Source: Octopus sinensis
Taxonomy: Eukaryota
NCBI RefSeq assembly: GCF_006345805.1
Contig: NC_043006.1
Location: forward strand, 51,584,001-51,648,000
Direction of reading: 5' to 3'
DNA: 64,000 nucleotides
Shown here: positions 6,380 through 63,585 of the stretch, piece after piece
Numbering within the stretch: the stretch's first letter is position 1
How the letters are laid out: each line of letters starts with the position of its first letter
Program-made: the position numbers and the translations under genes
The notes under the pieces: generated by a model
Seen by the model: only the letters and a program-made list of their open reading frames with translations
What the model was told of the DNA's origin: nothing
Databases searched by the model: none

Positions 6380-6567
6380 TTATTTCCTGTGGTGTTTATT
6401 CATTTTTAATGACTTTTTCCTATCGTCACGATAGCCAGCACTCCCCAGTTTATTATTCACCATCTCTTCAGATTGTTTCAGCTTTTCTTTAACTGACAAT
6501 TTTATTTCCCTGATTTTTTCTTGTAACACGTTTATGATAATCTTTCTCAAGTATTTCTTAGCTTCCT
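6380..6567 (-). CDS. CFAP119: CFAP119 copy A exon 9 (terminal, coiled coil)
   Basis: ttgcag acceptor; [10 protein letters not shown]...KHHRK*. Confidence 0.9.
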
Positions 6568-9500
6568 CTGCAATATGTGAGAGAAATTAAATGATGAAAC
6601 AGTAATAAAAGAAATAATTAATTAGTTAACTGTGAGAGGTTATTGTAGGTATGGTGAACAAGGTATGAAATTAATTGATTATAATCAATTAATTTCATAC
6701 ATTGTTCACAATAGCCACATAAAATTTCCTACAGGTATTTAAACTGATATCAGCTGTATCAATTTGTCCAGTTTCAGAGTTTATGGGAGCACTGCCCCTC
6801 CATCTTGGCAAAAACATAATAGTTAAAAGATACCATATTCAATAAATAGATGCTCAAATGATCTTAGTATTCTGACCAGTATGATATAATAAGTGGTTAA
6901 GTAATATCAGTATCCTAACCAATAAAACACAGTCAATAAATTGTCAAACATTCTCAGTAATAAATCACAGACAAAATAAGTAAGAAATTCTTCTATTGAT
7001 ACAAAGCCTTGTGTTTAAATTCAATTACTCCCAGTAAATCTAGTTAATCTCAGTACATCGCTATTACAGAGGTGAGATGGCTGAGTGAATGGACTATTGG
7101 CTTATCTATTCCTGCTCATAGATGAGGAGTTCAAATCCAAGTTGATGTTTCATGTGCAGAACATTCCTTCAGAGTATTTGGCTGATAGAAGAAATAGGTA
7201 AGATATCAACTAGGAGTGTTACCTAAAATAGGCTGCCATCCTATCCAGGTGGATAGAAATCTCTGAAGCACAATAATGCCATAAAATCACAGATGAACTG
7301 CTTTATTCCTGTTTCCGAGGAAATCTATATACACAATACATAACATTATTCACTTTTCTGTTTTACACTGTATAATATAAGTAAAACATCATATTTTTTA
7401 ATTTACTAGGGTTGAAGGAAGAACGGTGCCCATAACCTTTGGAAGCTTTCACAGACTGTGAGACCAATGTCGTTAATGGTCCATACAGAAGCTCCCTTGT
7501 TGACTTATAGTGAAAGTATTAATACCAGTGTCAGTTTCTTAACTATATACTAACATGGTAGAAGATAAAAATATAATTTCTAATGGAAACACAAAGGGAA
7601 TGTATGGTACTTATGCCTTTTCCAAAACCATTACTACCAAAATAAAAAAAAAATAAAAAACAATTTCAAATTGGAAGCAAATCCAGATGGCAAAGAACTT
7701 TCCACAACATTACTGTCTTTTTAAGAGCAGCACGTTGAAGACTGGTAGGGAAACTGTGCAAGAATCTGTTACATATATCATATGCAACAATCTATACACA
7801 CTCTGAAAATTTACACCTTGATGTTAACCTTTTAGAGTGTGTAGTTACATTATGTTTATATATGCTATGTTAGCAGTGGCTTAGTGGGTATGAACATTAC
7901 TATCCTTAGTTTAGAAATAAAAATTTCTACTTCAAAACTAGTTTGGGACACTGAACATATCTCAGGATTATCAAGACACTTGACTGGAGATTAAACTAAC
8001 CAAAATACTGTGTAGATATGATTATTGTAAATATACAGTGTAAATATGAGGTTAATAGTCTGGAAAATTATCTTCTGAATCTACTTAAGATGTTGCTAAC
8101 AAACCTTTTTCAGTAATCTTGACCAGCTCATTTTCTTTGTCAATGCATTCATCTGTTACTTGGGAACCTTTAGTTTCAGATATCCGAGGATCAACTTTGA
8201 AAAATAAAAATAAAAATACATATTGAAGTTGTTGATGTTATTAGAATTTATAAACTTCAAGATAACATGAAATAATTCATTTTAGAGCAGTGAAAATCAA
8301 AGCAGATAAATCTATAAATAATAGTGTGTAAATACTGGATTAAACAAAAAACAAAAAAGAACATTTGGATAGGAAAAGTCAAAGACAACGTTTGGCCTTT
8401 TAACCCAATATTTATACACTATTATTTATAGCTTTAGATGGGTCAAGTTTCACCATTGAAGCAGTGGTGGAATTCTGCTTTACACAAAGCATATAACCCC
8501 TCATAACTTTTTGATTTTTTTGAATTTTTGGAAAACTTTTGCAAATTTGTGTTCTGCACGTGAGAAATCATACAATTATGCAAAAATTTTTATTTTGATT
8601 TTTTTCTTAATTAAAAAAAATTTTTTTTTAATTTTTCAAACATTTCTTTAAAATCACAGTTTAATATATGGGCAGTCTGAATTTTTGGCTAAATCCCAAC
8701 AATAAACCATTAAATGTATTTATGGGGAGAAAGCTATTATAAAACATCAATATGCCAGAGTATCAAACAAACAAGGACAGTATGAGGCGGCTGTGATATG
8801 CTAAAAATAACAGCTGAAATCACAAAAAAATTTTATTTTGTTTTTCTATAGTATCGAACACAAATTTGCAAAAAATTTTCTGAAAATTTCTAAAGTAGTG
8901 TTATATGCTGTGTGTAAAGCAGTATTCTATTGAAGTATTTTCCAAAATGAATTTTTTGGGGAAGCATCTGCTTTATATCTATTTCACACCTATTTTCTCC
9001 AAAGATATGCTTTACAAACAAATATTTAACCTTAACCTAACCTCATTTTAGCTTTCAAACTATTTATTTTTTTTTGTTTCTTATAACCTATCATCCTCAT
9101 TATGTGCCAGAAGATATAACTTAACATTGTAGATGTTATAATAATATTATTATTACTGGCTTATATAAGCATGAAATAATGAAATGTGAAATTTCTGAGC
9201 ATGTGTAGTAATTTGGGCAAATGTCTTCTACTATAGCCTCATGTTAACCAAAGCTTTGTGAGTGAACTTGGCAGGCAGAAACTGAAAGAAGTCTGTCATA
9301 CATATTTGGGTCATCCCATAAATAATGCATTTTTTTATACTAATTTATTTTTCAAAATTAAGATAAACAAAGTTTTTTCTTAATCTAAAATATACTCTCC
9401 TTCATTTTCTACAATGCTCTTCCATCTATCTGGTAGACTTCCAAGGCCCCTCTTCCAAAATTCACCTGTCTGTGATGAAAACTGCTCCTCCAGTACTATT

Positions 9501-12500
9501 CTGACCTCATCTACAGAATTCATATTTTTTCATCCAAATGATTTCAAAGACTGCAGAATGAATGATAATTAGATGGGGCAATGCCTGGCAAATATGGTGG
9601 ATGGGGCATCATTTCCCATTCAAATTACTCTAGCCTTTGGAATGTCATTCTCGCTGTATGTGGCTGAGCATTATCCTGATGAAAGATCACCTTTCATCTT
9701 GAAACCAAAGATGGTCATTTTTCTTCTAGTGTTGTCTTAAGCCACTGAAGCTACTCACAGTAGATCTCCTCTGTTATCATTTGGTTTGGGTTTAAAAGTT
9801 CAAAGTGGACTAAAACTTTCATATCCCACCAAACAGATAACAACATCTTACATGGGTGAAGACCTTCTTTAGCCTGGAGTGGCGGTATTTCTTCTTTCCC
9901 TACCAACTTCTACGGTGCTTGACATTTTTATAGAGAACCCATTTCTTGTCATTAGTCAATATTTGGTCCAAAAAAGGTTCATATGTGAGACATGACAGCA
10001 GAGAAGAGCACACATTCACTCGCTGTATGCAATTAGACTAGGAAAGTTTGTGAGGAACCCATTGACCCAATTTGCTGACTTTTCCAATGGCATGCAGATA
10101 TCGATGAATGGTTGAATGACCAAATCCAAGCTTTTTCAACAGTTACAATGGGATTTTGTGCCACCTGGGTGTGCAAGATGTCCTTGTTGAGCTCTACAGA
10201 TCTTCTAGGATGAGGCTCATCTTCTAGTCTGTAGTTTCTGGCTTGGAATTTCTGGAATCGCTGTTGACACTGGCTTACACTTATTTTCCGATCCTCATAT
10301 ACTGCATTAATATTTCTCGCACTTTCTGTTGTGCTGTTGCCTTTATTGAACTCATAAAGCAAAATTTGCCAAATCTGCTCCTTTGTCACATCCATTATAG
10401 CTTTGAAAAAGTAACTACTAAAATCGACCTACACTCTTCAAAACTTGCACTAAGAACAAGGACATGGTAAAATTACTACCTGCTTTTATAGAAAGTTGAT
10501 GCAGGTAGTTTATCCTGTCCCCCTCTGACTTATAATTCATGCAATTAAAAAGTCTGCATTATTTATGGGATGACCCAATATATATATATATATATAGTTA
10601 TATTTCGGAATGGTCATATTGCCAGTTTAGCCAATAAAAACACACGCACTATATATTTGGTGTTATTTTGCTTCAGTGATATTTATTTTTTACATTAATC
10701 TTAATCTTATTTCGGCCAAAGTTCTTTCGTCACACTCCTGTGACCGCATCAGTGGTCCTTTGTTTTCTTCTCACTTACTTGTGTCTCTCCTTACTAACCG
10801 TCAGCCATTTTGTATTTCTATTGTATGTCTTCATTTGCGCATGCTTATATCTCTATGTGCGTCTATGTTTATTTAGTGTGTGTGTGGGGGGGATGCCTGT
10901 AATATTTGTATCTTCTGGTTATATACATTCTTGTAATTTGTATTTTGTTTTTGTTGTTGTTGCTTTTGTTCTAATTTTGTTCATGTGTTTACATCCACCC
11001 ATTATTATCATTACATATGCTTGTATGTATGTATAACAACAATATTAGTAATAATAATAATAAATCTAATTGAAAAAAAAAGGCCACACATTTAAATTTA
11101 AATTTAATAATAAAATTTAATAATAAAATATATGCCCAGGACGAGGGGGCAGCCATCGGTGTTAGTATCGCTGGTGATGTGGCCAACCTCTTCATGGTAT
11201 GGTGGGACAGAAGGCTTAAAGAATGCCTACTGCAGAAATCCATACTCGTAAACATGTACTCTCGCTATGTTGATGATATCAATATAGTAGTAAAGGCACC
11301 CCCACAAGAGAGTACTGTTGATATAGTAATAGAAACTAATACTATGGAGAGCATCCAGCAAATAGCTAACTCCATCCACCAGAGTATTAAGGTCACAATA
11401 GACTACCCCACTAAACACCCCAACCATAGACTACCAGTACTAGACACTGAACTCTGGCTAGAAATTGTGAAAAATAAAACCCAAACCCAAACCCAAATCC
11501 TTCATTCATACTATGCAAAACCTATGGCCTCAAAATACCTGATCCACCGGAACTCAGCCATTGCGGGCAATGCCAAATTCAATATTTTGATGGCAGACCT
11601 CGTCAGAATAATGAGAAATGTGTCACGCATGTGCGAGCCTACAGAATTAAAGAGACACATACAGTATTTCATTCACCGCATGCAGTTCTCAGGTTACAGC
11701 CATAAAGAAAGGATCAGAGTATACAAAGGAGCCATGAAGAAATTTGATAATATATTATGTAATGATAGGAATGGGATTTGCCCACTCTATAGGAACAAGT
11801 CATGGAACACTATAGAAAGGACAAAAAAGAAAATAAGGAAGGCCAACTCTTGGTATGATAGCCATAAATACCAAAGTGTCATGTTCGTTGACACCACCCC
11901 TGGAGGTGAACTAGCGTACCGCTTTAGAAGGACCCTAGATAAACTTAAACTAAGAATTAAGGTTGTTGAAAAGCCAGGCAACCCTATCAGATCTATAATT
12001 GGTAGAACCTATCCTTTTAGTAGAACTCTCTGTACGGATAACTATTGCACTGTATGTAGATTTAGCCCACAAACGAACTGTAAGCCAGAAATGTGGTCTA
12101 TAGTATAAGATATAGAGGGACGATGCAGTAACAAGACAGTAACATACGTAGGGGAAACTGCAAGAAGCATTGGTGAGCGGGTGAATGAACATTGGAGACA
12201 ACTCAAGGAAGGTAAAAGCTCATCGATTCTGTACCAACACGCCAAACAAGAACACGGGGGATCAATCAATAACATAGAGATTAAGATATTGTCCACACAT
12301 AGAACAGATGCAACAATTAGACAAATTACAGAAGCTACACATATAATAGAAAATAAACCTAGCCTGAATAGAAAACTAGAATGGAGCAATAGCGCACACC
12401 ACAACATATGACAATAGTGGATCCTGCAAACATAATAAATACACAGGTAATTAAAGAAATAGAAATGAATATCTATATATATGTATATGTGTATATATAT

Positions 12501-13148
12501 GTATATGTATATGTGTATATATGTGTGTATATATGTATATATATATATATGTATATGTATATGTATGTATATATATATATGTATATGTATATTCTTTTTT
12601 TTTTTTTTTTTTTCGATTAGATTTATTATTATTATTACTAATATTGTTGTTATACATACATACAAGCATATGTAATGATAATAATGGGTGGATGTAAACA
12701 CATGAACAAAATTAGAACAAAAGCAACAACAACAAAAACAAAATACAAATTACAAGAATGTATATAACCAGAAGATACAAATATTACAGGCATCCCCCCC
12801 CCACACACACTAAATAAACATAGACGCACATAGAGATATAAGCATGCGCAAATGAAGACATACAATAGAAATACAAAATGGCTGACGGTTAGTAAGGAGA
12901 GACACAAGTAAGTGAGAAGAAAACAAAGGACCACTGATGCGGTCACAGGAGTGTGACGAAAGAACTTTGGCCGAAATAAGATTAAGATTAATGTAAAAAA
13001 TAAATATCACCGAAGCAAAATAACACCAAATATATAGTGCGTGTGTTTTTTATTGGCTAAACTGGCAATATGACCATTCCGAAATATAACAATATCTGTT
13101 TCAACACACGACTTCACATAAAAAATCTTGCACAACAAATATTTAAAC

Positions 13149-13190
<42 letters not shown>

Positions 13191-14224
13191 ATATATATAT
13201 ATATATATATATAATACACACACACACATATATATATATACATATATGATATGTACATATACATATATATATATAATATATATACACGAACATATATATC
13301 GCAAATAAGAAAATGGAAGAGAACAATAGGTGGTTCATTAACTTTTGGACATTAAAATGTTAACTTATTTATTTATTAAACTGATAGTATTATATATATA
13401 TATAATATATATATATATATAATATATATCTATATCATCGTCATCATCATCATCATCATTGTTTAGCATCCTCTTTCCATGCTGCCATGGGTTGGATGGT
13501 TTGACATGGAGCTGGCTATCAGGGAGCTGTCCAGAGTCTAACTGTCCATTGTGGCGTAGTTTCTATGTGTGTGCGTGTGTGTGTGTCTTTGCTTGTCCTC
13601 CTTGCTACTTGACAACTGGTGCTGGTTTGTTTACATCCTTGCAACTTAATAGTTCAGTAAAATGATACCAATAGAATAAGTACTAGGCTTCAAAAAAATA
13701 AGTCTTGGGGGTCGATTTGTTTGGCTAAAACCCTTCAAGGCAGTGCCCCTGTCAAAGGACTGAAACAAATACAAGGTAAAAAAGGTAGACGGTAATTGTA
13801 ATATTAACAAAATAAATTGAAGGGGTTCTAACTTTATATCCTAACCAACAGTTAGCTGATGGTAAATATAATGTTTATTTCAAATTTTGGCATAAGGCCA
13901 GCAATTTCGGGAAGGGGGTCAGTTGATTACTTCGACCCCATCATCATCATCATCATCATCATCGTTTAACGTCTGTTCTCCATGCTAGCATGGGTTGGAC
14001 GGTTCGACCGGGGATCTGGGAAGCCAGAAGGCTGCACCAGGCTCCAGTCTGCTCTGGCAATGTTTCTACAGCTGGATGCCCTTCCTAACGCCAACCACTC
14101 CATGAGTGTAGTGGGTGCTTTTTACGTGCCACCTGCACAGGTGCCAGGCAAGGCTGGCAACGGCCACGGTCAGATTGGTGTATTTTACGTGCCACCGGCA
14201 CGGAAGCCAGTCAAGGCGGCGCTT

Positions 14225-14279
<55 letters not shown>

Positions 14280-17200: not shown

Positions 17201-18067
17201 CCCTTGGCTGGTAATGACATTTGTGTTGCAGTATGAGAGGGTAGTCAAAGTAGGCTTAATGAAAAGTGAACTGTTGTCAGAAGATGTTAAAAAGGACTTG
17301 AGAGTCCAAATGACATCCAAAGGCCACAGAGCAATACCAAAACTGCAACCAATTAAAGGTGCCAGGACAAAGGGTATGACTTTGATGATACCAAGTGGAA
17401 AACCTAGTTTATATATTTGTTGTAGTAAAACACACCTCAGAGCTGAATGCCTTGAAAAATTAAGAAGATTAGGCAAAAACAAGGAGAGAAAAAGTAATGA
17501 AGAGCAACAGCAAAAAGAACCACAAACACCACTTTCCAGAGCAGCATCAGCTAAATTTCTGGAGATGGCAGTGGAAATATCTTTAAGTCCAGTATTACAC
17601 AGATGAGTGAGTAGCTCATTGCTTAACAGTATTAATCTGTAGTACTACACTTTCATTATGTGATGAGGAAGAAATTATTACAGAAGGAAGTATGAAAGGA
17701 AAAAAGATGATAAAAATCACAGAATAAAAGACAATATGAAACAAGGGAAACAAGTGAGAAAGAATAGTTTCTTCTGAATGACAAAATTTCTCAAATAGTT
17801 GATAGTCAAAATTACGCATTAACTGGTGTAATTGATTCTCTGAAGAAATATGAATGTCACAAGTTCAGAATAGAAACAATATGTAAAAGATAGACTACTG
17901 CACTAAAAATAGAATATCCTTGGGTGTGGGTATGTTCCAACATTAAATACCTAAAAAACTACAAAAGCAATAACAAAAATGCTTAGTAGTGCATTTGGTT
18001 CTACTCAGTCACAGTTTGAAAAGTAATTAAGTGAACAAGGTGATGGAATACTCAACTCAGAAAATCT

Positions 18068-18107
<40 letters not shown>

Positions 18108-51100: not shown

Positions 51101-51586
51101 AAAAAACAGAAGCATTCCATTGATCAATCTTGAATACACAAAGACACTGACCCTTAAAATATCTTTGATAAAAAAATGTATCTGAGGAAACTAATGATGG
51201 TTTGTATTTGCTAAAACAAAATTGATAAAATTTATAAAATGACATAAATCTATGTATCATGAGGAGCGGTGAGTTCTAAGTTGTATAAGAGAGGCCTTGT
51301 ATAAAGAAAAAATACTCATGAATCACTATCATTTCATAGTCAACTACAAAGTTAACTATAAAGGTTGTAACAATTTTTGCAATTTTTAGAATCAGCCAAT
51401 ACATATTTACTATGGTGGAAACATAAACAATTGCTCCTTACCTTGGCTTGTCATGGATTCAGATTCTCCAATGTAGTTTAAAGCTAAATCAAGCTGCACC
51501 TGACATTGGTAAAATGATTAATAGTTCACAGTAAAATAAATAAATTTTATTTATGTTTATGTTTATTTATTATGTTTGTGTGTCCA

Positions 51587-51670
<84 letters not shown>

Positions 51671-52911
51671 TGTGTGTATGGATAATAAACTACTATGGCT
51701 GTCACTCACAACTGAGAATGACTGGGTAGCATGTAGGTTTTTCCCTAATTCTTTTTGGTTCCTTTATAGTTATGAGTAGATACAGATGCACCTTCTCATC
51801 TCTCAAGCTTATCCCTAGTTGTCATATCCTGCAAAGGCTGCAATGGTACTTTTTTTACCAGCCTTGAAAAGATGAAATGCAAAGTTAACCTTGGTGGGAT
51901 TGGAATTCAGACTGCAGAGAGCTAGACTAGTACCATGCTGCATTTTGTCTGATGCTCTAATGAATCTGTCAATTGACACACACACGCATGCACGCACACA
52001 AATATATACATCATACACCTACCTAACAAGCATTTACTCTCATAAGGTGTTTTGTTGTTGTAGCCACATGAAATTCTCTATATAAATTAACAAGAGACAT
52101 AAATGACCATTCACAGACGAGTTATAAGACTTAACAGGAGTTACTTAGAAATGGTTAATTTGTAATCTTGAAACTTAAAAAGAATCATTAAAAGAAAATA
52201 AAGACAAAATAAGGTGGAATTTTCATTTATATACTGCTGTAAATAAACAAAGCGCATTACTACTGTTTCTTACCCAGAACAACATTGAATTGTTTCCACA
52301 CCTGCCCTATTTGCCAGATTTATCACCTACAGACTTCCAGCTTTTCCTCAAGATGAAAAGGCAGCTCAAAGGTCACCGTTTTAACACCATTGTCGAGATC
52401 AACAGCAAATTGCAGAAGGTAAACAATGTCCAGGCCAAATTCTAAAAGTTGCAGAAACACTGAGACCAATGCATTGTTGCACAAGGTGACTATTTCAAAG
52501 GAGATGATGTTAAAATCTTAGGTAAATAAGTTATTTTTTATTAAACATAACAAGTCTGGGAACTTTTTGATACCACCTTGTAGTTACATTAAAGATTTTG
52601 ATGTCAAATGAATCAGGTGGGATGAAGAAGGTATATAGCAAGCTCATTCATATCATCTTTCATGTTGCATTCCTTTTATTTCTTTCATTTTCTTCCATTT
52701 AAATCAAGAAGTGACGTTCAATTTGATCTACCAAATAAAATCTCATTACTTTTATAAAAATCTTACTTGATCTCATAGTTGTCAGGTCAAATGATGCTCA
52801 GATGGTTACAAAATGCTTTCTTTATTACTGAATATACACTACCCTGTAAATATCTAATATAGCACATATCTGTTGCTGTGTACAACTAATGTAGAGTGTA
52901 TATTTGGTGCA

Positions 52912-52981
<70 letters not shown>

Positions 52982-55900
52982 AAAGTCGAAGTGCGATAAA
53001 ATAAAATTAATTATTATCGCTGGTGTTTCTAGCACAGGCCATATATTATTCATATATAAGTACATTAAAAGGCGAAGTATGTACTAGAAACACAGAAGCT
53101 TGATAAATTTAGTGAAATGAAAATAAAAACGTTTACTAACTCGGTTCCTCTTAGACTGCAGTTTCGTTCTTTTCAGTAATAAAAATAATTTAATTACTCA
53201 GGGAGAATTCATCGGTAAGAGCCCTGTTATTGTGAAATCGCACCTCACTAGAAACATGTGCGTCTAATAATTTGCTCTCTCTAACTAATCAAATCACTGC
53301 GCAGACGCAGAACGTACCCGACAAACTAGGGATTTCTGGTATATTGTCTAACGCTCAAAATTTATCGAGAAATATGTAAACAAAGTCGAAGTGCGATAAA
53401 ATAAAATTAATTATTATCGCTGGTGTTTCTAGCACAGGCCATATATTATTCATATATAAGTACATCAAAAGGCGAAGTATGTACTAGAAACACAGAAGCT
53501 TTATATATATATAAATCTCTCTCTATATATATGTATATATCTATTATCATCATCATCACCATTGTTTAACATCCATCTTCCATGCATGCATGAGTAGGAC
53601 AGTTGTTGACAGGAGCTAGCCAGGTAGAAAAACTACCCTAGGCTACTGTGTTTGCTTTGATTTTACAGCTGGATACCCTTCCTAACACTAACCACTCCGT
53701 AGAGTGGACTCAATACTTTTTATGTGGTACTAGCACAGGCAAGGTTAGTTTTGGCATGACTTTTACAGCTGGATGTTTCTAAACGCCAGCCATGTTACAG
53801 TATGGACTGGATGCTTTTAACGTGGCACCACACACACACACACATACACATCCCCATACGCACTCTCCAGATATACATTACTCTTAATATATACTTTATC
53901 AAACATAATACTAGATTTGACTTAAACCTTCCACTAGAGAGATGCTTCATAAAACAGAATGCTTCAGTAGTGAGCCAACTAACCTAATGACTAACAGAAA
54001 AAGGAAAAACTATACATTAAAGAAAAACAGAATGGACTAAACAGAACAGGAGGAGACATGTGGGATAGAGAGTCACTGAAGAAGTCACAGGATGTATGAC
54101 GAAAGATTTCAGACAAAGAACACTAAAATAAGAATAATAATAAAGCTGAAGTAAAAACCAAGTATATAAGGTGTGCAGTTAATTGGCAAAAAATATGACC
54201 ATCCCCAAGTATAACATAAAAGTAAAAATTACTAGGAATGTCACAAGAGTAAATCTTTTTACCCAGTCTTACAGATATGTTAACACTAATTAAATACTGT
54301 CTGTAGAATTCAACACTGCCATGGAGCTCTTACATAGTCACTCATTCTATTACAGGCAACAACCAAATATCCCCTAAATTATACCCAACTTTTAAAAGAT
54401 GAAAGATACAATCACAGTAAATAATGTAATACTATGTAGACTATATCACATAAAAAATAAGAGTTGGTTACATTTAATTAAAAATATGTGGGATTAGGGC
54501 TGACCTAGAGCCAAAAAAGAATAACAGACTAATTTCCTGGACACTATCAAAGCTGATTTCTCTTGCAGACCTTTGCATTGTCATTGATGGTCAAGCTGTT
54601 ACATTTATCATCCTAAAGGCCAACTGGACAACTGTTCATATCTTGCCATGGTATTGAACATATATGAGGGCTTCATATAGGAGCAGAATGTAAAGAACAT
54701 ACATAGATAAAGAAGAGCTTACATATAGATAAAGCAATAGATTTACCTGTGGAGTGAATGCATACTTGTATAGTTTAAAGTGTCTAAAATATGTGTTAAT
54801 CATATGATAGGATATCTTCCTTACTTCACTTATTGAAAACAGTTCAGTGCTGTATGGTGGACGCTAGAAAGAGAAAGTAATAAATGAGTGGTGGCCACTC
54901 ATTTGTTGTTGTTGTTTAGTTCAGGTTAGATCTAATTCAGCAGACATATACACTTTTACTCTTTTACTTGTTTCAGTCATTTGACTGTGGCCATGCTGGA
55001 GCACCGCCTTTTGTCTAGCAAATTGACCCCAGGACTTATTCTTTGTAAGCCTAGTACTTATTCTATTGGTCTCTTTTGCCAAACCGCTAAGTTACAGGGA
55101 CGTAAACACACCAGCATTAGTTGTCAAGCGATGTTAGGAGGACAAACACAAACACACACACACACACATACGACGGGCTTCTTTCAGTTTCCTTCTACCA
55201 AATCCACACACAAGGCTTTGGTCGCTCCGAGGCTATAGTAGAAGACACTTGCCCAAGGTGCCACGCAGTGGGACTGAACCTGGAACCATGTGGTTGGTAA
55301 GCAAGCTACTTACCAAACAACCACTCCTATGCCTATGATTAAAGATATTTCATCTGCAACCATCTTGTCTATTACTATTGGGTCACATTATCCAATATGC
55401 ATTTCTTTTATTAAAACAAGGAAGTTTCCACAGAAACTAAATGCTCCTCATATTCTACTCCACCATCTTAGCAAGTGAAGAACACACTGGATAATATAGT
55501 TATAGATACATTGATTAAATAATTAATACACCTTTGATCAAGTGTCTACTGGAGCAATGTTTACCTGGGGTTAAACAACAACCATCATAACAATTGCATA
55601 CATTACTCAGCATAAGAATCAAACAGTAACAGAGCAAAAGTATTTATATCAAGCATTTTCCAGTTTGGGAATAGGAAAAACTGGAGTGCCTTACTGATAC
55701 TTTGACTTAATATTGATCACAGAAAGGAACTTCATGATTTGTGTGGAGGCTAATAATAATAATAGTAATAGTAATAGTAATAGTAGTAGTAGTAGTAGTA
55801 GTAGTAATAGTCATTGTAGTAGTCGTCGTCGACGTCGTTTAATATCCATTTTTCATGCTGGCATGGGTTGGACGGTTCAACTGGGATCTGGGAAGCCAGG

Positions 55901-58900
55901 AGGCTGCACTAGGCCCCAGTCTGATCTGGCAGTGTTTCTACAGCTGGATGCCCTTCCTAATGCCAACTCTGTGAGTGTAGTGGGTGCTTTTTATGTGCTT
56001 CTGTCACAGGTGCCGGGGGAGGCTGGCAATGGCCATGATCGGTTGGTGCTTTTTACATGCCACTGGCACGGAAGCCAGTCAGGGCAGGGCTAGCATTGGC
56101 CACGTTTGGATGGTGCTTTTTATATGCCACCAGCACGGGTGTCACAACTATAATTTCCATTTGATTTTTATTTTGATGTTGATGTAGTTGACTCAGTAGG
56201 TCTCCTCAAGAACAACACGTTGCCCTACGATCCAAGGTAAGCACAGCAGGCCGTCCTGAGATCCAAGGTACTTTGGATGGGCTGGGGCTGCTATGTGAAG
56301 CTGGTGCAGGAAACAACCATGAACTCACGTTATTTGTCGGGTCTTCGCAGTCACAGCATATCTCCAGAGATCTCGGTCTTTCGTCATTGCCTCTAATATG
56401 TAGTATAAATATGACCATGCATACATACACACAGAAGTGTAAATAAATGCACATACTTACAAACATTGAAGAAATATAAAGGACTTGTACTGTTGTAGAC
56501 AATGTGACATTAACAAAGGGAACCGGCAGAGTGAGAGACAGTGTGATACATGTAAGGAAAATTACATACGGAAAAATTAATGTAGATACTGTTTCATTTA
56601 ATGGAAGAACAAGACAGTGACACATCTTAGAGGGATATGTGTCATAAAGTAATTGAGACAGGTGGTGAGATATAGGTTACCAGAACTAATACAGACAGTA
56701 AGACATATATTAGTGGGACTGCAATACACAAAGTAATTTATTGGGTCATCCCATAAATGATGCAGTTTTTTCAATTGCATTAACTAAAAGTCAGAGGGGG
56801 ATGGGATAAACTATCTGCATCAACTTGTTATAAAAGCAGGTAGTCATTTTACCTTGTCCTTATTCTTAGTGAAAGTTTTGAAGAGTGCAGTTCGATTTTA
56901 AGAGTTATTTTTTCAAAGCTATAATGGAAGTGACAAAGGAGCATATTCAGCATATTTTGCTTTATGAGTTCAATAAAGACAACAATGCAATGGAATGTGT
57001 GAGGAATATTAATGCAGTATATGGGGATCAGATAATAAATGCAAGCCAGTGTCAATGGTGGTTCTAGAAATTCCCAGCTTAGAAACTACAGCTTAGAAGA
57101 TGAGCCTTGTCTCGGAAAATCTGTAGAGCTTGACAAGGATGTCCTGCAAACCTTGGTGGAACGAAATCCCATCGTAACTGTTGAGGAACTAGCAGAGAAG
57201 GTTGGATTTGGTCATTCAACCATTTATCAACACCTGCGTGCAATCAGAAAAGTCAGCAAATTGGGTCAATGGGTTCCTCACAAACTTTCCGAGTCTAATC
57301 ATGTGAACGTGTGCTCTTTTTTGTAGCCACGTCTCATGAATGAACCTTTTTTTGGAATAGTGACTGGTGATGAGAAATGGGTTCTCCATAAAAATGTCAA
57401 GTGCTAAAGACAGTGGGTAGGGAAAGGAAAAATACCAGCACCCCAGGCTAAAGAAGGTTTTCATCCATGTAAGGTGTTGTTATCTGTTTGGTGGGATATG
57501 AAAGGTTTAGTCCACTTTGAACTTTTAAACCCAAACCAAATGATAACAAAGGAGATCTACTGTGAGCAGCTTAAGTCAATGCTATAAGAAAAATGACTCT
57601 TTGATTTTAAGACAAAAGGTGTTCTTCCATAAGGATGACGTTCAGCCACATACAGTGAGGATAACATTCCAAAGGCTGGAGTAATTTGAATGGGAAATGA
57701 TGCCCCACTCACCATATTAGCCAAACATTGCTTCATCTGATTATCATTTACTCTGCTTAGTCTTCAAAATCATTTGGATGGAAAAAATATGAATTCTATA
57801 GACGAGGTCAGACTAGTACTGGAGGAGTATTTTTCATCACAGACAAGTGAATTTTGGAAGAGGGGCCTTGCAAGTCTACCAGATAGATGGAAGAGCATGG
57901 TAGAAAAATATTATTTATGGGATGACCCAATATAAGAGCATTGTAACATATATGTGAAAATTACAGAAACAGTATGTCATAAAGGGAGTGTTACAGTCAC
58001 TATGACATGTATTTGTGTGTGTGCCATAAACAGTGCAAGAAATATTCAAGGTATGTCATGACATGTATTAGAGAAAACGTCACAGTATGACAAACGTAAG
58101 GGTGAGTTTAACTTACACTGACGCTATGATGTAGGAGTATATCTTTGAAAAAGTTAAATGTGTCATCCAAGTTACCAAAGGGACTTTCTGAAAAGCATAA
58201 AAATAGAGTTTGCATCAAACACAATCTTTTGGGAAAGTAATAAAAAAAACCTCAAAAAACAAAAAAACAAATTTATATAGGTATACTGAAAAATAAATGT
58301 GGTTTCTACTATTATTGTTGTGAATGTTGTTGATAATGTGAAAGTTGGATTGATGTTGGGATATCTCTGGATAAATAGACAATTAGTAAGGAAAAAGTCA
58401 CTAAACATTGTTAATGAAATTGTTCAATTTAGAATTTAAGTATTGGTTGTTTTGTCTGATATAGACATTGTTAAAGAAACTGTATTGTTTAGTTTAAATT
58501 TTAAGTGTTCACTGTAGTTGTCTCAACTAGATCAGTTGCTTTTGTTGTTTAGCCCAAAGACAGCCCTGATCAAGAAGGTCTGTGACCAAAGGTGTTTCAA
58601 TCATAACCCACCAATCTTTTGTCTATACAGATTCATATTATTTAATATGTTCTCTTCTCAAATGGTAATGTGCAATTTGAGAGATATTGGTTTCAGTTTC
58701 TAGCATGCCAAGTAACTATATAAATGATTCCTTGCAGGTTTACTTACCAGATTAGTTGTCTTTGGTGATAACACTGTTGTTGTAAGAGAGTAATGCATGT
58801 TAGAGGAATAGATATTATTTCACAGACCACTATGGCCAACAGGTTCTCATGATGCTACGCAGATGAAAAATAAATCATCACCTGGATAGCATACTAGTCT

Positions 58901-59052
58901 AATGCATGTGTCTTTATTTTTACATAAAATTAACACTGGAAGTTAATTAGACACCCATCAAATTTATAGTACTCTGCAGCTTGCAGTATGTATCTATAAT
59001 CAATGCTTTTAAAGGAATTTTGGAGATGAAAACTATAGTAAGCCTTTGTGTG

Positions 59053-59088
<36 letters not shown>

Positions 59089-62000
59089 TGTGAGAATGTT
59101 GACATTCCATAGTTTTGCTTGTGTGAAATCATCATCATCATCATCATCATTTAACGTCCGCTTTCCATGCTAGCATGGGTTGGACGGTTCAACTGGGGTC
59201 TGGGGAGCCCGAAAGCTGCACCAGTCCAGTCAGATCTGGCAGTGTTTCTACAGCTGGATGCCCTTCCTAACGCCAACCACTCCGAGAGTGTAGTGGGTGA
59301 TTTTATGTGCCACCGACACAGGTGCCAGACGAGGCTGACAAACGGCCACGCTCGGATGGTGTTTTTATGTGCCACCGACACAGGTGCCAGACGAGGCTGG
59401 CAGACGGCCACGCTCGGATGGTGTTTTTATGTGCCACCGACACAGGTGCCAGACGAGGCTGGCAGACGGCCACGCTCGGATGGTGTTTTTATGTGCCACC
59501 GACACAGGTGCCAGATGAGGCTGGCAGACGACCACGCTCGGATGGTGTTTTTTATGTGACACCGACACAGGTGCCAGATGAGGCTGGCAAACGGCCACGA
59601 TCGGATGGTGCTTGTTACGTGCCCACAGCACGGAGGCCAGTCGATGCGGTACTGGCTACGGCCACGTTCGGATGGTTTTCTTATGTGCCACGTGCCACCG
59701 GCACTGGTACCACAAAGATACAAATTCCATTGATGTTCATCTATTTTGATTTGTTTTGATTTGATTTGATTTGATTTTCACTTGCCTCAACAGGTCTTCA
59801 CAAGTGTCACAAGAAGGAAGGTATGCACAGGTGGACTGACTACGTCCCAGGTAGGGGCCATGGGTTATGGCCTGACTAGTCTTGCCGGGTCTTCGGATGG
59901 TGTTTTTATGTGCCACCGACACAGGTGCTAGATGAGGCTGGCGAATGGCCACGATCGGATGGTGTTTGTCATGTGCCCACCGCACTGACTACGGCACTGA
60001 TGGATTCTTGTGTGCCACAGGCACTGGTACCACAAGATACAAATTCCATTGATGTTCATCTATTTTGTCTATTTTGATTTGATTTGATTTGATTTTCACT
60101 TGCCTCAACCGGTCTTCACAAGTGTCACAAGAAGGAAGGAAGGTATGCACAGGTGGACTGACTAGTCTTGCCGGGTCTTCGGAAGGTGTTTTTATGTGCC
60201 ACCGACACAGGTGCCAGATGAGGCTGGCGAACGGCCATGATCGGATGGTGTTTGTTACGTGCCCACAGCACGGAGGCCGGTCGATGCGGAACTGGCTACG
60301 GCCACGTTCGGATGGTTCTCATGTGTGCCACCGGCACTGGTACCACAAAGTGTGTGCCACCGGCACTGGTACCACAAAGATACAGATTCCATTGATGTTC
60401 ATCTATTTTGATTTGTTTTGATTTGATTTTCACTTGCCTCAACAGGTCTTCACAAGTGTCACAAGAAGGAGGTATGCACAGGTGGACTGACTACGTCCCA
60501 GGTAGGGGCCATGGGTTATGGCCTGACTAGTCTTGCCGGGTCTTCGGATGGTGTTTTTATGTGCCACCGACACAGGTGCTAGATGAGGCTGGCGAACGGC
60601 CACGATCGGATGGCCAGTGATGCGGTACTGACTACGGCCACGTTCGGATGGATTCTTGTGTGCCACCGGCACTGGTACCACAAGCGGTACTGACTACGGC
60701 CACGTTCGGATGGATTCTTGTGTGCCACCGGCACTGGTACCACAAGCGGTACTGACTACGGCCACGTTCGGATGGATTCTTGTGTGCCACTGGCACTGGT
60801 ACCACAAGGATACAAATTTCATTGATGTTCATCTATTTTGATTGGTGAATAATATTACATTCTTCATTGACATTATGACCAGTTGCTCTGAAGTTTTAAA
60901 GATATATGGAATAAGGTAAAATCTCTTACCTGAAAAACAAGTGGAAGTAATAGGAAGAGCATGGAACTATAAAATTCTTCCCCAAATACATCCCTGTCTA
61001 ACTCATGCCAACATGGAAAAACAAATGTTAAATGAATGAAAAACCAAATAACCACACCTTCAAAGACTTACCAGTACAGACTTCATGAACTCTTTTTACA
61101 ATTGAAAAATAGGCAGATAACTGCTCAGATTTGAATTTTTCTTCCTTTGCAAATTGTATAGAATATGTGTAAAGGTTGAGTAGAATCTTTTCTTTATATA
61201 CTGTTGCATAATTAGTGAGTTTAAAGATTTCAGCAAGAATACTAAAAAACAGGTAGAAAGTAGAATTGAAAAAAAATATATAATATACACTATCAGATTA
61301 TTTTTCAAAATGAAATTTTATAATCTTAAAAATGTATCTCAAATTTTATTTGAGGTTTGTTAAAACTGCTGAAAAGTCTCCAGGAAAGTACCTTGGTATG
61401 GTTGTTTATAATCTAATCCATGTAGGTACAGTGTGGCTGAATGGTTAAGAATGACAAAGTCCTGGGTTCTATCTCACAGAATGGAATCCTGGGCAAATGT
61501 CATTTTCTATAGCCTTGAGTAAACCCATGCCTTGTGAGTGAAATTTGGTAGATGGAAACTGCACAAAAGCCTGTCAGATGAATTGTATCTGAAATTTAGA
61601 AGGTACAACCTTGTAACATATCGTGTCACACTGACTCTGCCTGAGAATTATATTAAAGGGCACACGTGTTTGAGGAATGCTCAGATGCTTACATGTTAAT
61701 TCAGTTGATCAAATAACTGAATCGTCATCATCAGATGGTGGAGATCCACCACCCTATTCAGACATATACAACCAAAGAATTTTAAGGGAAGGAGAACATT
61801 TTATGAAAATGATGTAAAATGTAAACACAGTAGGAATGGATGAAGGTGTGTGGTTCAGTACTTAGGGTATTCAGCTCACAACTGTAAGGTCATGAGTTTG
61901 ATTCCCAGTGGTGCATTGAGCAAGACACTTTACTTCACGTTGCTCCAGTCCACTCAGCTGGCAAAAATGAGTAATACTTGTATTTCAAAGGGCTAGCCTT

Positions 62001-63585
62001 GTCACATTCTATGACATGCTGAATCTCCCTAAGAACTACGTTAAGGGTACGCGTGTTTGTGGAGCACTCAGCCATTTGCACATTAATTTCATGAGCAGGC
62101 TGTTCCATTGATCGGATCAACTGGAACCCTTGTTGTTGTAACTGATGGAATGCCAGTTACCAGTTGGGTAACTTAAATATATTACAGCCTCAGTTTATCA
62201 GGAACAAGTTTTGGGAACAGTTTGGGACCAAAATAAGCTCAATTATTTAAAACTTTTAATACCGACCCACCTGTGTTTGTCATTGGAGGTATGATACAAA
62301 ACTGTCAATTTTAAAATATTTATATTTAAATTGAATCTTCTTAGTTTAATCTAAGAACCTTTTGCTATGTCGAAATACCAACCTAATAATGGATTATTCA
62401 GAAATATTTTTTTTATTTGCCAAGTCTGGGAAGAAAGTGTCATGCCCATAACTCTTCCATGTGTTCTGAGATGTATAAGATTAATAACATTGATGACTGT
62501 AGGGAAGATATGCACAAGGAGAGAATTCCAAAGAGCTGACATTCTGGGAAAGAAGGACTGGACATAATAGTTTGTACAGGACTTAGGGGATGGACACATT
62601 ATGGGGATGGTCTCATCTGTTCAAAACTGAGTGTTGCTAGACATGATGTGCAAGAGAAAAAGTGTGAGGGCATTGGTGAAGTGTGGGTTAAAGAGAAGGT
62701 TCTTTAGAATAAAAATTAAAATGTTCTCAGATTACTTCTTGCTGAAGTTTACTATGACAGAGTTAAGATGACCAGGTAACAGAACTGTTTGTGTGCTAAG
62801 TGCCCTTAAGCCAAAGTATGATGCAGCTAACTGGTTCATGAAAAGCAGTGCTATGGTTGTTGTTTAACCTCAGTTCAGCTTTCCCCAAGCAGATAGATTA
62901 TCAAATACTCAGACATATGATTAAATGCTCATTATTTAAACATAGTCTGTCTAGGATCACATTTTCCATTATGTTTGTCATTATCTAAGATTTTGTAATA
63001 TGATTTAATGAATATTTGGCTACTATTTCTAGCAAGACATGTAAGCATACAAGGGATCTGTACTTGGATTATGTGTAGAAGTTTCTGTGTTGGCTTAAAT
63101 AGAGTTTGTTACAGTAAGATTAAAAGAAGCAGAGGATAGAGTTAGATGGAAGTGGAAATATTATCTAATACAGAAGAGATTCCATTATTTATAGAGGCAC
63201 AAGGTGGCAAAATAGTTAAAGCATCAGAAAATAAAAATACACAGTGATATTTTTTATGGCTGTTCACATTCTGAGTTCAAATCCTGCCATGGTCAGCTCT
63301 GTCTTTTATCTTTCCAGGGTTGATAAAACTAGGGTTGATTTAATCAAACCCTCCCCACAAATTTCTGGCATTGTTCATTTATAGATGCTAAAGCAACTCT
63401 CCTTTAAACTGAAAACTATGAAGGACAGAAAATAAACACTATACCTGGTTCCACTGCAAAGGGTGAATCTGCAGAAATGCTAGTATGATGAATTCCAGTT
63501 TTCAACAAAAGATACTTACTCTTTTACTTTTTTCAGTGTTGGAGCTTTCATAAGTGATTCTGATTGTTCTGGGTCCAAGTCATTC
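45259..63585 (-). CDS. CFAP119: CFAP119/CCDC189-family protein, copy B, 5'-partial (exons 3-9); join(63585..63520, 61241..61072, 58187..58117, 54863..54747, 51499..51442, 49324..49223, 45509..45259)
   Basis: Seven GT-AG exons with the same phases as copy A and an open frame: (W)NDLDPEQ...ILAEIFKLTN...ESPFGNLDDTFNFFKDILLHHSVS|RPPYSTELF...[17 protein letters not shown]|VQLDLALNY...[22 protein letters not shown]...SSYY*. Confidence 0.92.
47150..48170. repeat. Cluster of Penelope-type terminal fragments separated by (TA)n; includes two hairpins and decayed hammerheads (47200-47240, about 47399-47445)
   Basis: Minus 47240-47200 reads ..TTGAAAA-AGTC(TCAAT)GACT-GAAA-CCGG-TA-CTGAA. Hairpins at 47673-47804 and 47980-48152. 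Confidence 0.75.
48530..49134 (-). mobile_element. CR1/L2-group LINE 3' end
   Basis: LYIAMVQPHLEFASPVWNPY..DINCLETVQ..ATKRIP..LPYSECL..LG; a second tail at 49445-49700 and a related fragment at 62350-62660. Confidence 0.88.
49223..49324 (-). CDS. CFAP119: CFAP119 copy B exon 8
   Basis: 102 nt, aag/GTATGT; an in-frame alternative acceptor 9 nt upstream (exon start 49333) is possible. Confidence 0.83.
50010..50422 (+). mobile_element. SINE family A, full length
   Basis: GGCGCAGGAGTGGCTGTGTGG A-box, GGTTCAGTCC B-box, CORE-like TTGGGCAAGT, (AAAGAGT) tail. Confidence 0.93.
51442..51499 (-). CDS. CFAP119: CFAP119 copy B exon 7
   Basis: 58 nt, cag/GTAAGG; VQLDLALNYIGESESMTSQ. Confidence 0.93.
52265..52580 (+). 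mobile_element. Mariner transposase C-terminal fragment plus right TIR
   Basis: FPHLPYLPDLSPTDFQLFLKMKRQLKGHRF resembles HPPYSPDLAPxDF; ends GAACTTTTTGATACCACCTTGTA. Confidence 0.82.
52915..52977. repeat. (TA)n microsatellite; other long tracts at about 1246, 3810, 13150, 14229, 26740, 29890, 38495, 39020 and 48145
   Basis: Read directly. Confidence 0.95.
52977..53501 (-). mobile_element. 400-bp retrozyme/pLTR-like unit with 125-bp direct terminal repeats
   Basis: 52977-53101 equals 53377-53501 (1 mismatch); bounded by (TA)n on both sides; contains a hammerhead. Confidence 0.8.
53148..53221 (-). ncRNA. Type-I hammerhead motif with long stem II (U4C; A at 10.1)
   Basis: CTCTTA-CCGATGA-[ATTC..AGTAAT..ATTACT..GAAC]-GAAA-CTGCAG-TC-TAAGAG: 6-bp stem I, palindromic stem III, GUC site. 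Confidence 0.72.
54072..54114 (+). ncRNA. Minimal hammerhead motif in an older copy of the 12890-13090 terminal repeat
   Basis: GTCA-CTGAAGA-A-GTCACA(GGATG)TATGAC-GAAA-G(AT)T-TC-AGAC; intact core. Confidence 0.68.
54747..54863 (-). CDS. CFAP119: CFAP119 copy B exon 6
   Basis: 117 nt; RPPYS...[17 protein letters not shown]. Confidence 0.95.
54951..55334 (-). mobile_element. SINE family A
   Basis: Matches the family consensus. Confidence 0.9.
56741..57930 (+). mobile_element. Mariner element, same family as 9305-10578, with a 3' internal deletion
   Basis: TA-TTGGGTCATCCCATAAAT...ATTTATGGGATGACCCAA-TA; [18 protein letters not shown].., WVPHKL, IVTGDEKW. Confidence 0.93.
58117..58187 (-). CDS. 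CFAP119: CFAP119 copy B exon 5
   Basis: 71 nt, ttttcag/GTAAGT; (E)SPFGNLDDTFNFFKDILLHHSVS. Confidence 0.93.
59130..60840 (-). repeat. RTE 3'-UTR copy expanded into nested tandem arrays (62-bp units)
   Basis: Units start at 59305, 59367, 59429, 59491 and 59554; a second 62-bp unit starts at 60622, 60684 and 60746; blocks of about 300 bp are re-duplicated between them. Confidence 0.88.
61072..61241 (-). CDS. CFAP119: CFAP119 copy B exon 4
   Basis: 170 nt (one codon longer than copy A), ttttag/GTAAGT. Confidence 0.93.
63520..63585 (-). CDS. CFAP119: CFAP119 copy B exon 3
   Basis: 66 nt, cag/GTAAGT. Confidence 0.92.

What the first reader, a model, noticed from the sequence alone, without database searches (positions are those of the whole stretch)
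6380..63585. Cryptic tandem duplication of the axonemal gene CFAP119, with both copies apparently intact
Two complete-looking exon chains with identical phases lie head-to-tail about 9.7 kb apart and are almost invisible in the ORF track. A hand count gives 108/161 identical residues over exons 3-7. Introns still align in patches (e.g. 6830-7420 vs 45700-46330; 30270-30450 vs 63590-63760), so this is a lineage-level DNA duplication rather than the old CFAP119/CABCOCO1 split. CFAP119 is an axonemal protein (central-pair C1a in Chlamydomonas, sperm-flagellum function in mammals) that I know as single-copy in mammals. A retained duplicate could indicate cilia versus sperm specialisation; that last point is inference.
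Basis: partly seen in the sequence, partly recalled or inferred. Interest (0 to 1): 0.75.

Follow-up and report, generated by a model that had tools for sequence, protein, structure and literature searches.

The report
Two of five octopus CFAP119 genes
The window (Octopus sinensis) really does hold two intact head-to-tail copies of the cilia/sperm-tail gene CFAP119, but both are already annotated in RefSeq and belong to an old five-gene cluster shared by several octopus species, so this is a solid but fairly ordinary gene-family expansion.

Summary
On the minus strand lie two CFAP119/CCDC189 genes with identical exon phases and canonical splice sites. Copy 1 runs 35576..6380 (9 coding exons, 276 aa). 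Copy 2 runs 63585..45259 (exons 3-9; exons 1-2 lie beyond the right edge). The gap is 9.7 kb.

Both are CFAP119, not CABCOCO1: Pfam CLAMP E 2e-29 and 7e-34, and mouse CFAP119 structure 9ijj E 1e-43 and 9e-38. But they are not cryptic. Copy 1 is 100% identical to an O. sinensis RefSeq CCDC189-like protein and copy 2 matches another. Nor are they a simple pair. Octopus has five paralogues (A-E) in one cluster, A-> <-C <-B | D-> E->, each with orthologues in O. bimaculoides and O. sinensis/vulgaris. The window holds B and C. Argonauta groups with A (99.8% bootstrap), so the first split predates the Argonauta-Octopus divergence.

Both copies look functional: open frames, CLAMP-core dN/dS 0.27, and most near-invariant residues kept. 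Cilia-versus-sperm specialisation is untested. Squid and Nautilus were not sampled. Interest is modest.

The parts
35642..35656 (-). X-box-like palindrome GTTGTTAATAGCAAC, 66-80 nt upstream of copy 1's ATG. A candidate RFX site in the copy 1 promoter.
   Evidence: The identical 15-mer sits 87 nt upstream of the O. bimaculoides orthologue (L003 31771). The strict motif occurs 8 times in 277 kb against 1.04 expected, and 5 of the 8 lie 66-416 nt upstream of a paralogue's first coding exon. The pattern was defined post hoc.
35535..35576 (-). Copy 1 (paralogue C, RefSeq LOC115216215), coding exon 1: [17 protein letters not shown], donor gtaagt, phase 0.
   Evidence: 100% match to the N-terminus of P0019.
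32361..32392 (-). Copy 1 exon 2: [10 protein letters not shown](W), acceptor ctctag, donor gtaagt, ends in phase 2.
30199..30264 (-). Copy 1 exon 3 (66 nt).
27239..27405 (-). Copy 1 exon 4 (167 nt), where the CLAMP domain starts.
24103..24173 (-). Copy 1 exon 5 (71 nt).
18409..18525 (-). Copy 1 exon 6 (117 nt). Carries the [17 protein letters not shown] motif. Skipped in RefSeq isoform X3 (P0019).
16572..16629 (-). Copy 1 exon 7 (58 nt): [19 protein letters not shown].
8105..8194 (-). Copy 1 exon 8 (90 nt), an acidic linker.
6380..6567 (-). Copy 1 exon 9 (188 nt), the C-terminal coiled coil. Stop codon TAA at 6380-6382.
   Evidence: The full CDS is 831 nt and translates to 276 aa. Residues from W25 onward are 100% identical to P0018.
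35577..45258 (.). 9.7-kb spacer between copy 2's stop codon and copy 1's first coding exon. It is repeat- and microsatellite-rich.
63520..63585 (-). Copy 2 (paralogue B) exon 3 (66 nt). It contains the internal ATG used by RefSeq isoform X2 (MKAPTLKK). Exons 1-2 lie beyond the window's right edge.
61072..61241 (-). Copy 2 exon 4 (170 nt).
58117..58187 (-). Copy 2 exon 5 (71 nt).
54747..54863 (-). Copy 2 exon 6 (117 nt).
51442..51499 (-). Copy 2 exon 7 (58 nt).
49223..49333 (-). Copy 2 exon 8 (111 nt with the RefSeq acceptor aatgaag|AAATAC). An alternative acceptor 9 nt downstream aligns with copy 1's.
45259..45509 (-). Copy 2 exon 9 (251 nt), coiled coil plus a longer basic tail. Stop codon at 45259-45261.
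5833..6379 (-). Copy 1's 3' flank, still alignable with copy 2's 3' flank (44718-45098). This shows the duplicated unit extended past the stop codon.

Best explanation
The window is a piece of an Octopus sinensis chromosome. It carries two adjacent, same-strand members (B upstream, C downstream) of a five-gene cluster of CFAP119/CCDC189 paralogues.

Origin. The cluster arose by repeated whole-gene tandem duplication in the octopod lineage, presumably by unequal crossing-over (inferred). At least one inversion then produced the present layout A-> <-C <-B | D-> E->. The first split (A versus the ancestor of B-E) predates the Argonauta-Octopus divergence. All five genes predate the O. bimaculoides / O. 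sinensis-vulgaris split.

State of the two copies. Each window copy keeps the ancestral exon-intron structure and an intact reading frame. In each, the CLAMP domain is under purifying selection while the N- and C-terminal parts diverge fast.

Function (inferred by homology, not shown here). The proteins are subunits of the C1a/C1e projections of the axonemal central apparatus, where mouse CFAP119 pairs with MORN2. Having several paralogues most likely allows different copies to be used in different projection positions or in different ciliated cell types, including sperm.
For: Shown here:
- Identity of the genes: copy 1 is 100% identical to P0018 and copy 2 matches P0026, both O. sinensis RefSeq proteins.
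- Gene structure: canonical splice sites and identical phases at every junction.
- Family: Pfam CLAMP at E 2e-29 and 7e-34. Near-full-length matches to mouse CFAP119 (9ijj), then to Chlamydomonas FAP119 and FAP114.
- Five orthogroups, each with 100% bootstrap support. The octopod clade has 100%, Argonauta+A 99.8%, and the B-E clade 88%.
- Cluster order and orientation, from O. bimaculoides loci L001 and L003 and O. vulgaris locus L002.
- Age: paralogue introns are 74% identical over 4.7 kb, while orthologous B-gene DNA is 91% identical over 11.1 kb.
- Selection: paralogue dS 0.70 with omega 0.40 overall and 0.27 in the CLAMP core; B-orthologue omega 0.63 overall and 0.42 in the core.
- Conserved residues: copy 1 keeps 40 of 45 near-invariant metazoan positions, copy 2 keeps 37 of the 42 covered.
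- A neutral CDS stays stop-free in only 0.2-0.5% of simulations at 0.13-0.16 substitutions per site.
- X-box-like motifs lie just upstream of several paralogues' first exons.

From the literature:
- CFAP119 is in C1a and C1e and is modelled as a complex with MORN2; FAP114 and FAP119 are its algal homologues (PMC12297659).
- Ccdc189 knockout mice are male-infertile with flagellar defects (PMC10437088).
Against: - RefSeq models are predictions.
- The tree is neighbour-joining on 268 columns, and relations among B-E are weak (35-59%).
- No squid, cuttlefish or Nautilus sequence was recovered, so 'octopod-specific' really means 'absent from sampled bivalves and gastropods and present in Octopus'.
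- Only one Argonauta gene was seen, and only 10 kb on each side of it was inspected.
- B-orthologue omega of 0.63 is only weakly below 1 (about 73 substitutions).
- The small C-orthologue sample (82 codons, 12 non-synonymous to 1 synonymous change) does not itself show constraint.
- The X-box pattern was tightened after seeing the first site.
- Copy 2's 5' exons are outside the window.
Confidence: 0.88

Rival explanations
1. A simple, recent, species- or genus-level two-copy tandem duplication: the reader's picture of one ancestral gene and one retained duplicate.
For: The two genes are adjacent, on the same strand, share the same structure, and have more alignable intron DNA with each other (4.7 kb) than either has with E (1.9-2.9 kb).
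Against: Five orthogroups exist, each shared by O. bimaculoides and O. sinensis/vulgaris with 100% support. The B-then-C order is conserved in O. bimaculoides. Paralogue dS is 0.70 against orthologue dS of 0.13. B+C sister support is only 21%.
Confidence: 0.03
2. One of the two copies is an unprocessed pseudogene, or is on its way to becoming one.
For: Evolution is fast outside the CLAMP core (B-orthologue C-terminal omega 0.72). The small C-orthologue sample shows 12 non-synonymous to 1 synonymous change. RefSeq lists an exon-6-skipping isoform of copy 1 that removes the most conserved motif (P0019).
Against: Both frames are open across all exons in the window, and all splice sites are canonical. 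The orthologues in O. bimaculoides are also open. CLAMP-core omega is 0.27 between paralogues. Copy 1 keeps 40 of 45 and copy 2 keeps 37 of 42 near-invariant residues. The neutral survival probability is 0.5% or less.
Confidence: 0.05
3. An assembly artefact: uncollapsed haplotypes or a mis-join creating an apparent duplicate.
For: None specific.
Against: The copies are only 62% identical in protein and about 74% in alignable DNA. They carry different transposon insertions. The same B-then-C arrangement is present in the independent O. bimaculoides assembly.
Confidence: 0.01
4. One copy is really the CABCOCO1 orthologue, the other CLAMP-domain protein of animals.
For: CABCOCO1 also carries a CLAMP domain (from established knowledge). 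No CABCOCO1 sequence was compared directly.
Against: Both copies align over nearly their full length, including the C-terminal coiled coil, with proteins named CFAP119/CCDC189 from cnidarians to mammals at 35-46% identity. No hit is named CABCOCO1. Both sit inside one octopod clade with 100% support. The intron DNA of the two still aligns.
Confidence: 0.01

Closest known systems
Mammalian CFAP119 (CCDC189 / C16orf93), single-copy central-apparatus protein
   Same: It has the same domain (Pfam CLAMP PF14769) and the same overall layout: short N-terminal segment, CLAMP core with [17 protein letters not shown], acidic linker, C-terminal coiled coil. The match to the mouse chain in 9ijj has E 1e-43 and 9e-38 over about 240 residues.
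   Different: Octopus has five clustered paralogues rather than one gene. The octopod clade sits on a long stem branch, and the terminal regions evolve fast. Location in the axoneme and the MORN2 partnership are not shown for octopus.
Chlamydomonas FAP119 (C1a-34) and FAP114 (C1a-32)
   Same: These are an independent case in which the CFAP119 family exists as more than one paralogue within one central apparatus. Both are homologous to mouse CFAP119 (PMC12297659). Both window copies hit FAP119 (E 2e-23 and 6e-28) and FAP114 (E 4e-7 and 3e-9).
   Different: The algal pair is an unrelated duplication. Whether the octopus paralogues co-assemble in one axoneme, as FAP114 and FAP119 do, is unknown.
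RefSeq annotation of O. sinensis and O. bimaculoides 'CCDC189-like' / 'CFAP119' loci
   Same: The two window genes correspond to annotated products P0018/P0019 (LOC115216215) and P0026. The O. bimaculoides orthologues are P0020/P0021 (LOC106881705) and P0022.
   Different: The annotation lists them as separate loci without describing the cluster, its orthology groups or its age. No paper in the searched library mentions them.
CABCOCO1 (C10orf107), the other animal CLAMP-domain protein and a CCDC189 interactor
   Same: It shares the CLAMP domain family (from established knowledge) and interacts with CCDC189 in mouse (PMC10437088).
   Different: Neither copy resembles it more than it resembles CFAP119. 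No CABCOCO1-named protein appears among the hits.

Membership tests
CFAP119 / CCDC189 (CLAMP-domain central-apparatus protein) | Pfam CLAMP domain (PF14769) above the gathering score | tested here: met
   Copy 1 scores 102.3 bits (E 2e-29) and copy 2 scores 116.7 bits (E 7e-34), against a cut-off of 22.7. Profile positions 2-94 of 99 are matched.
CFAP119 / CCDC189 (CLAMP-domain central-apparatus protein) | Full-length collinear similarity to bona fide CFAP119, including the C-terminal coiled coil | tested here: met
   Mouse CFAP119 chain 9ijj_3K aligns with query residues 3-245 (copy 1) and 2-228 (copy 2). There are 108 hits, and the named ones are CFAP119/CCDC189.
CFAP119 / CCDC189 (CLAMP-domain central-apparatus protein) | Retention of residues near-invariant across non-octopod animals | tested here: met
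   Copy 1 keeps 40 of 45. Copy 2 keeps 37 of 45, with 3 positions not covered by the truncated model.
CFAP119 / CCDC189 (CLAMP-domain central-apparatus protein) | Groups with CFAP119 rather than CABCOCO1 in a tree containing both | not tested
   No CABCOCO1 sequence was obtained. There is only indirect evidence: no CABCOCO1-named protein appears among the hits.
CFAP119 / CCDC189 (CLAMP-domain central-apparatus protein) | Localisation to the C1a/C1e projections and pairing with MORN2 | not testable with these tools
   Known for mouse from PMC12297659. No octopus data.
Ciliary (RFX-regulated) gene | X-box motif in the proximal promoter | tested here: inconclusive
   GTTGTTAATAGCAAC lies 66-80 nt upstream of copy 1's ATG and is conserved in O. 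bimaculoides. The strict motif is enriched (8 observed against 1.04 expected), and 5 of the 8 lie near paralogue 5' ends. However, the pattern was refined post hoc, transcription start sites are unknown, and copy 2's promoter is off-window.
Tandem segmental (whole-gene) duplication | Same orientation, collinear homology extending into introns and flanks, identical exon phases | tested here: met
Unprocessed pseudogene | Premature stops, frameshifts or lost splice sites; omega near 1 | tested here: not met
   There are no stops or frameshifts, and all junctions are ag/gt. Paralogue CLAMP-core omega is 0.27.

The most novel reading that the evidence does not exclude
Octopods independently turned a normally single-copy central-apparatus subunit into a five-paralogue set. 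The members are sub-functionalised, either by position within the C1a/C1e projections (as Chlamydomonas did with FAP114 and FAP119) or by cell type (sperm flagellum versus epithelial or sensory motile cilia). The fast-evolving termini would reflect sperm-related selection.
Probability: 0.25. Interest if true: 0.5.

Novelty: new member of a known kind. Interest (0 to 1): 0.3.

Why it matters
CFAP119 is needed for sperm flagellum formation and male fertility in mouse, cattle and man. It sits in the C1a/C1e projections that regulate ciliary beating. A conserved five-gene cluster in octopuses would be a natural experiment in how a central-apparatus subunit can diversify, and it gives a concrete set of loci to examine in octopus testis and ciliated tissues.

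As a genomic feature, though, it is an ordinary tandem gene-family expansion. Its members are already in RefSeq, so its value is as a lead for cilia and sperm biologists rather than as a new kind of element.

Tried and rejected
- The first tblastx screens were swamped by SINE and microsatellite matches and had to be filtered by collinearity, strand and complexity.
- A 56-aa single-exon query found nothing in the word-indexed protein search.
- The 141-aa copy 2 query failed to return the identical RefSeq protein P0026, which only surfaced with the copy 1 query. I had briefly thought copy 2 was unannotated and dropped that idea.
- A scan for short ATG...TG|gt first exons near exon 3 gave only implausible candidates. 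The real upstream exons were found from the RefSeq N-termini.
- The look-up of encoding contigs had no record for P0018 or P0026, because they are not the longest isoforms. I could therefore not read the O. sinensis sequence beyond the window.
As a result, C-orthologue dN/dS rests on only 82 codons.
- The exhaustive HMMER search and two name look-ups gave no squid, cuttlefish or Nautilus sequence.
- A third family member inside the window was looked for and not found.
- The loose X-box pattern is at chance level (24 observed against 18.8 expected). Only the strict palindromic form is enriched.
- ARAGORN found no tRNA-like heads in the SINE family.
- Pfam gave nothing for the RT-like ORF at 11179-12108.
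Full report
WHAT IS THERE

The window is AT-rich eukaryotic DNA full of microsatellites and interspersed repeats, with no long ORFs. A blastn comparison of its two halves gives many repeat hits. It also gives one same-orientation collinear chain running from 5833-30416 to 44718-63753 at 65-82% identity. Chained, this amounts to about 4.7 kb at a mean of 74%. After filtering tblastx hits for collinearity and complexity, the conserved stop-free blocks turned out to lie on the minus strand. Reading each pair showed clean ag|exon|gt boundaries with matching phases.

The exact exon tables are as follows.
- Copy 1: 35576..35535, 32392..32361, 30264..30199, 27405..27239, 24173..24103, 18525..18409, 16629..16572, 8194..8105, 6567..6380. 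This is nine coding exons, 831 nt and 276 codons, with the stop codon TAA at 6380-6382.
- Copy 2: 63585..63520, 61241..61072, 58187..58117, 54863..54747, 51499..51442, 49333..49223, 45509..45259.

Full-length identity is 156 of 251 ungapped positions. The one caveat is that copy 2's exons 1-2 are outside the window: in the O. bimaculoides orthologue they lie 2.2 and 4.9 kb upstream of exon 3, and only 415 nt are available here.

WHAT THE GENES ARE

Both partial proteins hit Pfam PF14769 (CLAMP, 'Flagellar C1a complex subunit C1a-32') at E 2e-29 and 7e-34. Against solved structures, both match mouse CFAP119 from the in-situ sperm central-apparatus model 9ijj over nearly their full length (E 1e-43 and 9e-38). 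They then match Chlamydomonas FAP119 and, more weakly, FAP114.

The copy 1 model is 100% identical over 100% of its length to P0018, 'coiled-coil domain-containing protein 189-like isoform X2 [Octopus sinensis]'. So the window is O. sinensis. P0026, another O. sinensis CCDC189-like product, matches my copy 2 model except for an exon-8 acceptor 9 nt further upstream. Both genes are therefore already annotated. The word-indexed search with copy 2 had simply failed to return P0026.

All other named hits, from cnidarians to mammals, are CFAP119/CCDC189. None is CABCOCO1.

NOT A PAIR BUT A CLUSTER

The Octopus hits fall into five groups:
- A: P0028 (O. vulgaris) and P0001 (O. bimaculoides).
- B: P0026 (copy 2) and P0022.
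- C: P0018/P0019 (copy 1) and P0020/P0021.
- D: P0024 and P0023.
- E: P0027, P0002 and P0025.

I built a neighbour-joining tree of 24 sequences on 268 columns with 500 bootstraps. It gives:
- 100% support for an octopod clade that excludes Pecten, Mytilus, Lottia, Physella and all non-molluscs.
- 100% support for each of the five groups.
- 99.8% support for Argonauta hians (P0118) grouping with A.
- 88% support for a B-E clade.
- 0.2% support for an Octopus-only clade.

Distances from each paralogue to Pecten are similar (0.97-1.19), so the Argonauta+A grouping is not simply a rate effect. Relations among B-E are weak (B+C 21%, C+E 59%).

Genomic loci show the layout.
- In O. bimaculoides, A is on the + strand at 16.922-16.934 Mb. 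C is on the - strand (its last exon is at L001 32316..32129, 94% identical in DNA to copy 1's). B is on the - strand at 16.9696-16.9868 Mb, directly upstream of C. D is on the + strand, divergent from B.
- In O. vulgaris, D is followed by E on the same strand.
- The cluster is therefore A-> <-C <-B | D-> E->, and the window contains B->C.
- No third member lies in the window.

AGE

Orthologous B-gene DNA (O. sinensis window against O. bimaculoides L003) aligns over 11.1 kb at 91.0% identity. The B and C paralogues align over only about 4.7 kb at about 74%.

Nei-Gojobori estimates:
- Paralogues: dS 0.70, dN 0.28.
- B orthologues: dS 0.13, dN 0.084.

The B/C split is thus several-fold older than the species split. 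If the tree is right, the A versus B-E split is older than the Argonauta-Octopus divergence. Only an A-type gene was seen within 10 kb either side in Argonauta. The rest of that genome could not be searched. No decapodiform or Nautilus sequence was recovered. How deep the expansion goes within cephalopods is therefore open.

ARE BOTH COPIES FUNCTIONAL?

This part is inference from sequence.
- All junctions are canonical and the frames are open in both species.
- Paralogue omega is 0.40 overall and 0.27 in the CLAMP core.
- B-orthologue omega is 0.63 overall, 0.42 in the core and 0.72 in the C-terminus.
- For C, only 82 orthologous codons were available, with 12 non-synonymous and 1 synonymous change. 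That is too few to interpret.
- Copy 1 keeps 40 of 45 positions that are near-invariant in non-octopod animals. Copy 2 keeps 37 of the 42 covered.
- In simulations, a neutrally evolving copy 1 CDS remains stop-free in only 0.2-0.5% of cases at 0.13-0.16 substitutions per site, roughly half the paralogue intron divergence and ignoring indels.

Both genes have therefore been kept by selection, with a conserved core and fast-evolving ends.

PROMOTER HINT

A palindrome, GTTGTTAATAGCAAC, lies 66-80 nt upstream of copy 1's ATG. It resembles the RFX X-box of ciliary genes (consensus recalled from memory). The identical 15-mer precedes the O. bimaculoides C gene. A strict form of the motif occurs 8 times in the 277 kb held, against 1.04 expected from shuffles. 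Five of those lie 66-416 nt upstream of the first coding exon of a paralogue: C in two species, the B/D divergent promoter, and A in O. bimaculoides and Argonauta. The looser pattern is at chance level, and the strict pattern was chosen after seeing the first site, so this is suggestive only.

HOW IT MOST LIKELY WORKS

By homology, the products are subunits of the C1a/C1e projections of the central pair. In mouse sperm these projections share CFAP119, which is modelled as a complex with MORN2. Chlamydomonas uses two homologues, FAP114 and FAP119 (PMC12297659). Loss of Ccdc189 in mouse causes flagellar malformation and male infertility (PMC10437088), and there are bovine and human variants (PMC6460654, PMC12805148).

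The most likely reading is that octopods multiplied this gene by tandem duplication and kept the copies for position-specific or cell-type-specific use. Which of these applies, and whether sperm is involved, was not testable here. No paper in the searched library links the gene or these LOC identifiers with cephalopods.

VERDICT

- Right: the gene family, tandem DNA-level duplication, lineage-specific relative to other molluscs, both copies intact.
- Wrong or incomplete: it is not cryptic, because it is annotated in RefSeq. It is not a single duplicate, because it is two of five. It is much older than implied.

It is a new, undescribed example of a very familiar kind of thing, a lineage-specific tandem gene cluster. 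Interest is modest.

Noticed in passing
window 5183-5582, 14865-15289, 15759-16140, 29726-30193, 31365-31735, 42445-42843, 43131-43520, 50001-50444, 54953-55339: A SINE-like element of about 400 bp is present in at least nine copies in both orientations at 79-94% identity. The copies lie in introns of both CFAP119 genes and in the spacer. ARAGORN finds no tRNA-like part.
   Followed up: partly
window 29726-30193: One SINE copy is inserted only about 10 nt downstream of the donor site of copy 1's exon 3. It leaves gtaagtatct intact. Copy 2 has the empty site at 63507.
   Followed up: partly
window 9405-10583 and 56736-57907: There are two decayed mariner/Mos1-type transposon copies, 84% identical and in opposite orientation. 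One is in an intron of copy 1 and one in an intron of copy 2, at non-homologous positions. The HTH_48 domain hits at E 5e-15. Further Tc1/mariner fragments lie at about 20.7-23.8 kb (weak DDE_3 hit).
   Followed up: partly
window 10676-13010: A 309-aa ORF (11179-12108, + strand) contains a YVDD motif typical of reverse transcriptases. It is flanked by inverted repeats of about 360 bp, which encode near-identical 98-aa ORFs at 10740-11036 (+) and 12650-12946 (-). This is probably a retroelement with inverted termini. There is no Pfam hit.
   Followed up: partly
window 59128-59730, 60185-60350; related copies at 13943-14217, 26379-26737, 55835-56179: A repeat family with an internal tandem array of about 62 bp. 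The offsets 59358, 59420, 59482 and 59544 all match the same segment.
   Followed up: no
window 36000-40300: The spacer between the genes has strong strand-compositional shifts (AT skew -0.24 at 38-40 kb). It also has long low-complexity CA/TA-rich tracts that read as His/Thr/Pro-rich pseudo-ORFs of up to 242 aa, with no Pfam hit.
   Followed up: no
L003 7548-10042 (O. bimaculoides): Paralogues B and D are head-to-head, with first coding exons less than 2.5 kb apart. An X-box-like palindrome (GTTGCTATTGACAAC at 9585) lies between them, which suggests a shared bidirectional promoter.
   Followed up: partly
window 18409-18525 (copy 1 exon 6): RefSeq isoform X3 of copy 1 (P0019), and the matching O. 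bimaculoides isoform X4 (P0021), skip this in-frame 117-nt exon. It encodes the most conserved motif of the family ([17 protein letters not shown]). The same skip is predicted in two species.
   Followed up: no
L001 10001-22343 (O. bimaculoides A gene, P0001): The annotated A-type protein of O. bimaculoides (224 aa) ends after exon 8 and lacks the coiled-coil last exon, which the O. vulgaris (P0028) and Argonauta (P0118) A-type proteins have. No A-type last exon was detected by tblastn with the window's B and C proteins in the 10 kb between this gene and the convergent C gene. I did not search this stretch with an A-type query.
   Followed up: no
tool behaviour: The word-indexed protein search with 141 aa of copy 2 did not list P0026, although the two sequences are identical over about 130 residues. 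P0026 appeared only with the copy 1 query. The absence of an exact hit in that tool is not evidence that a gene is unannotated.
   Followed up: yes
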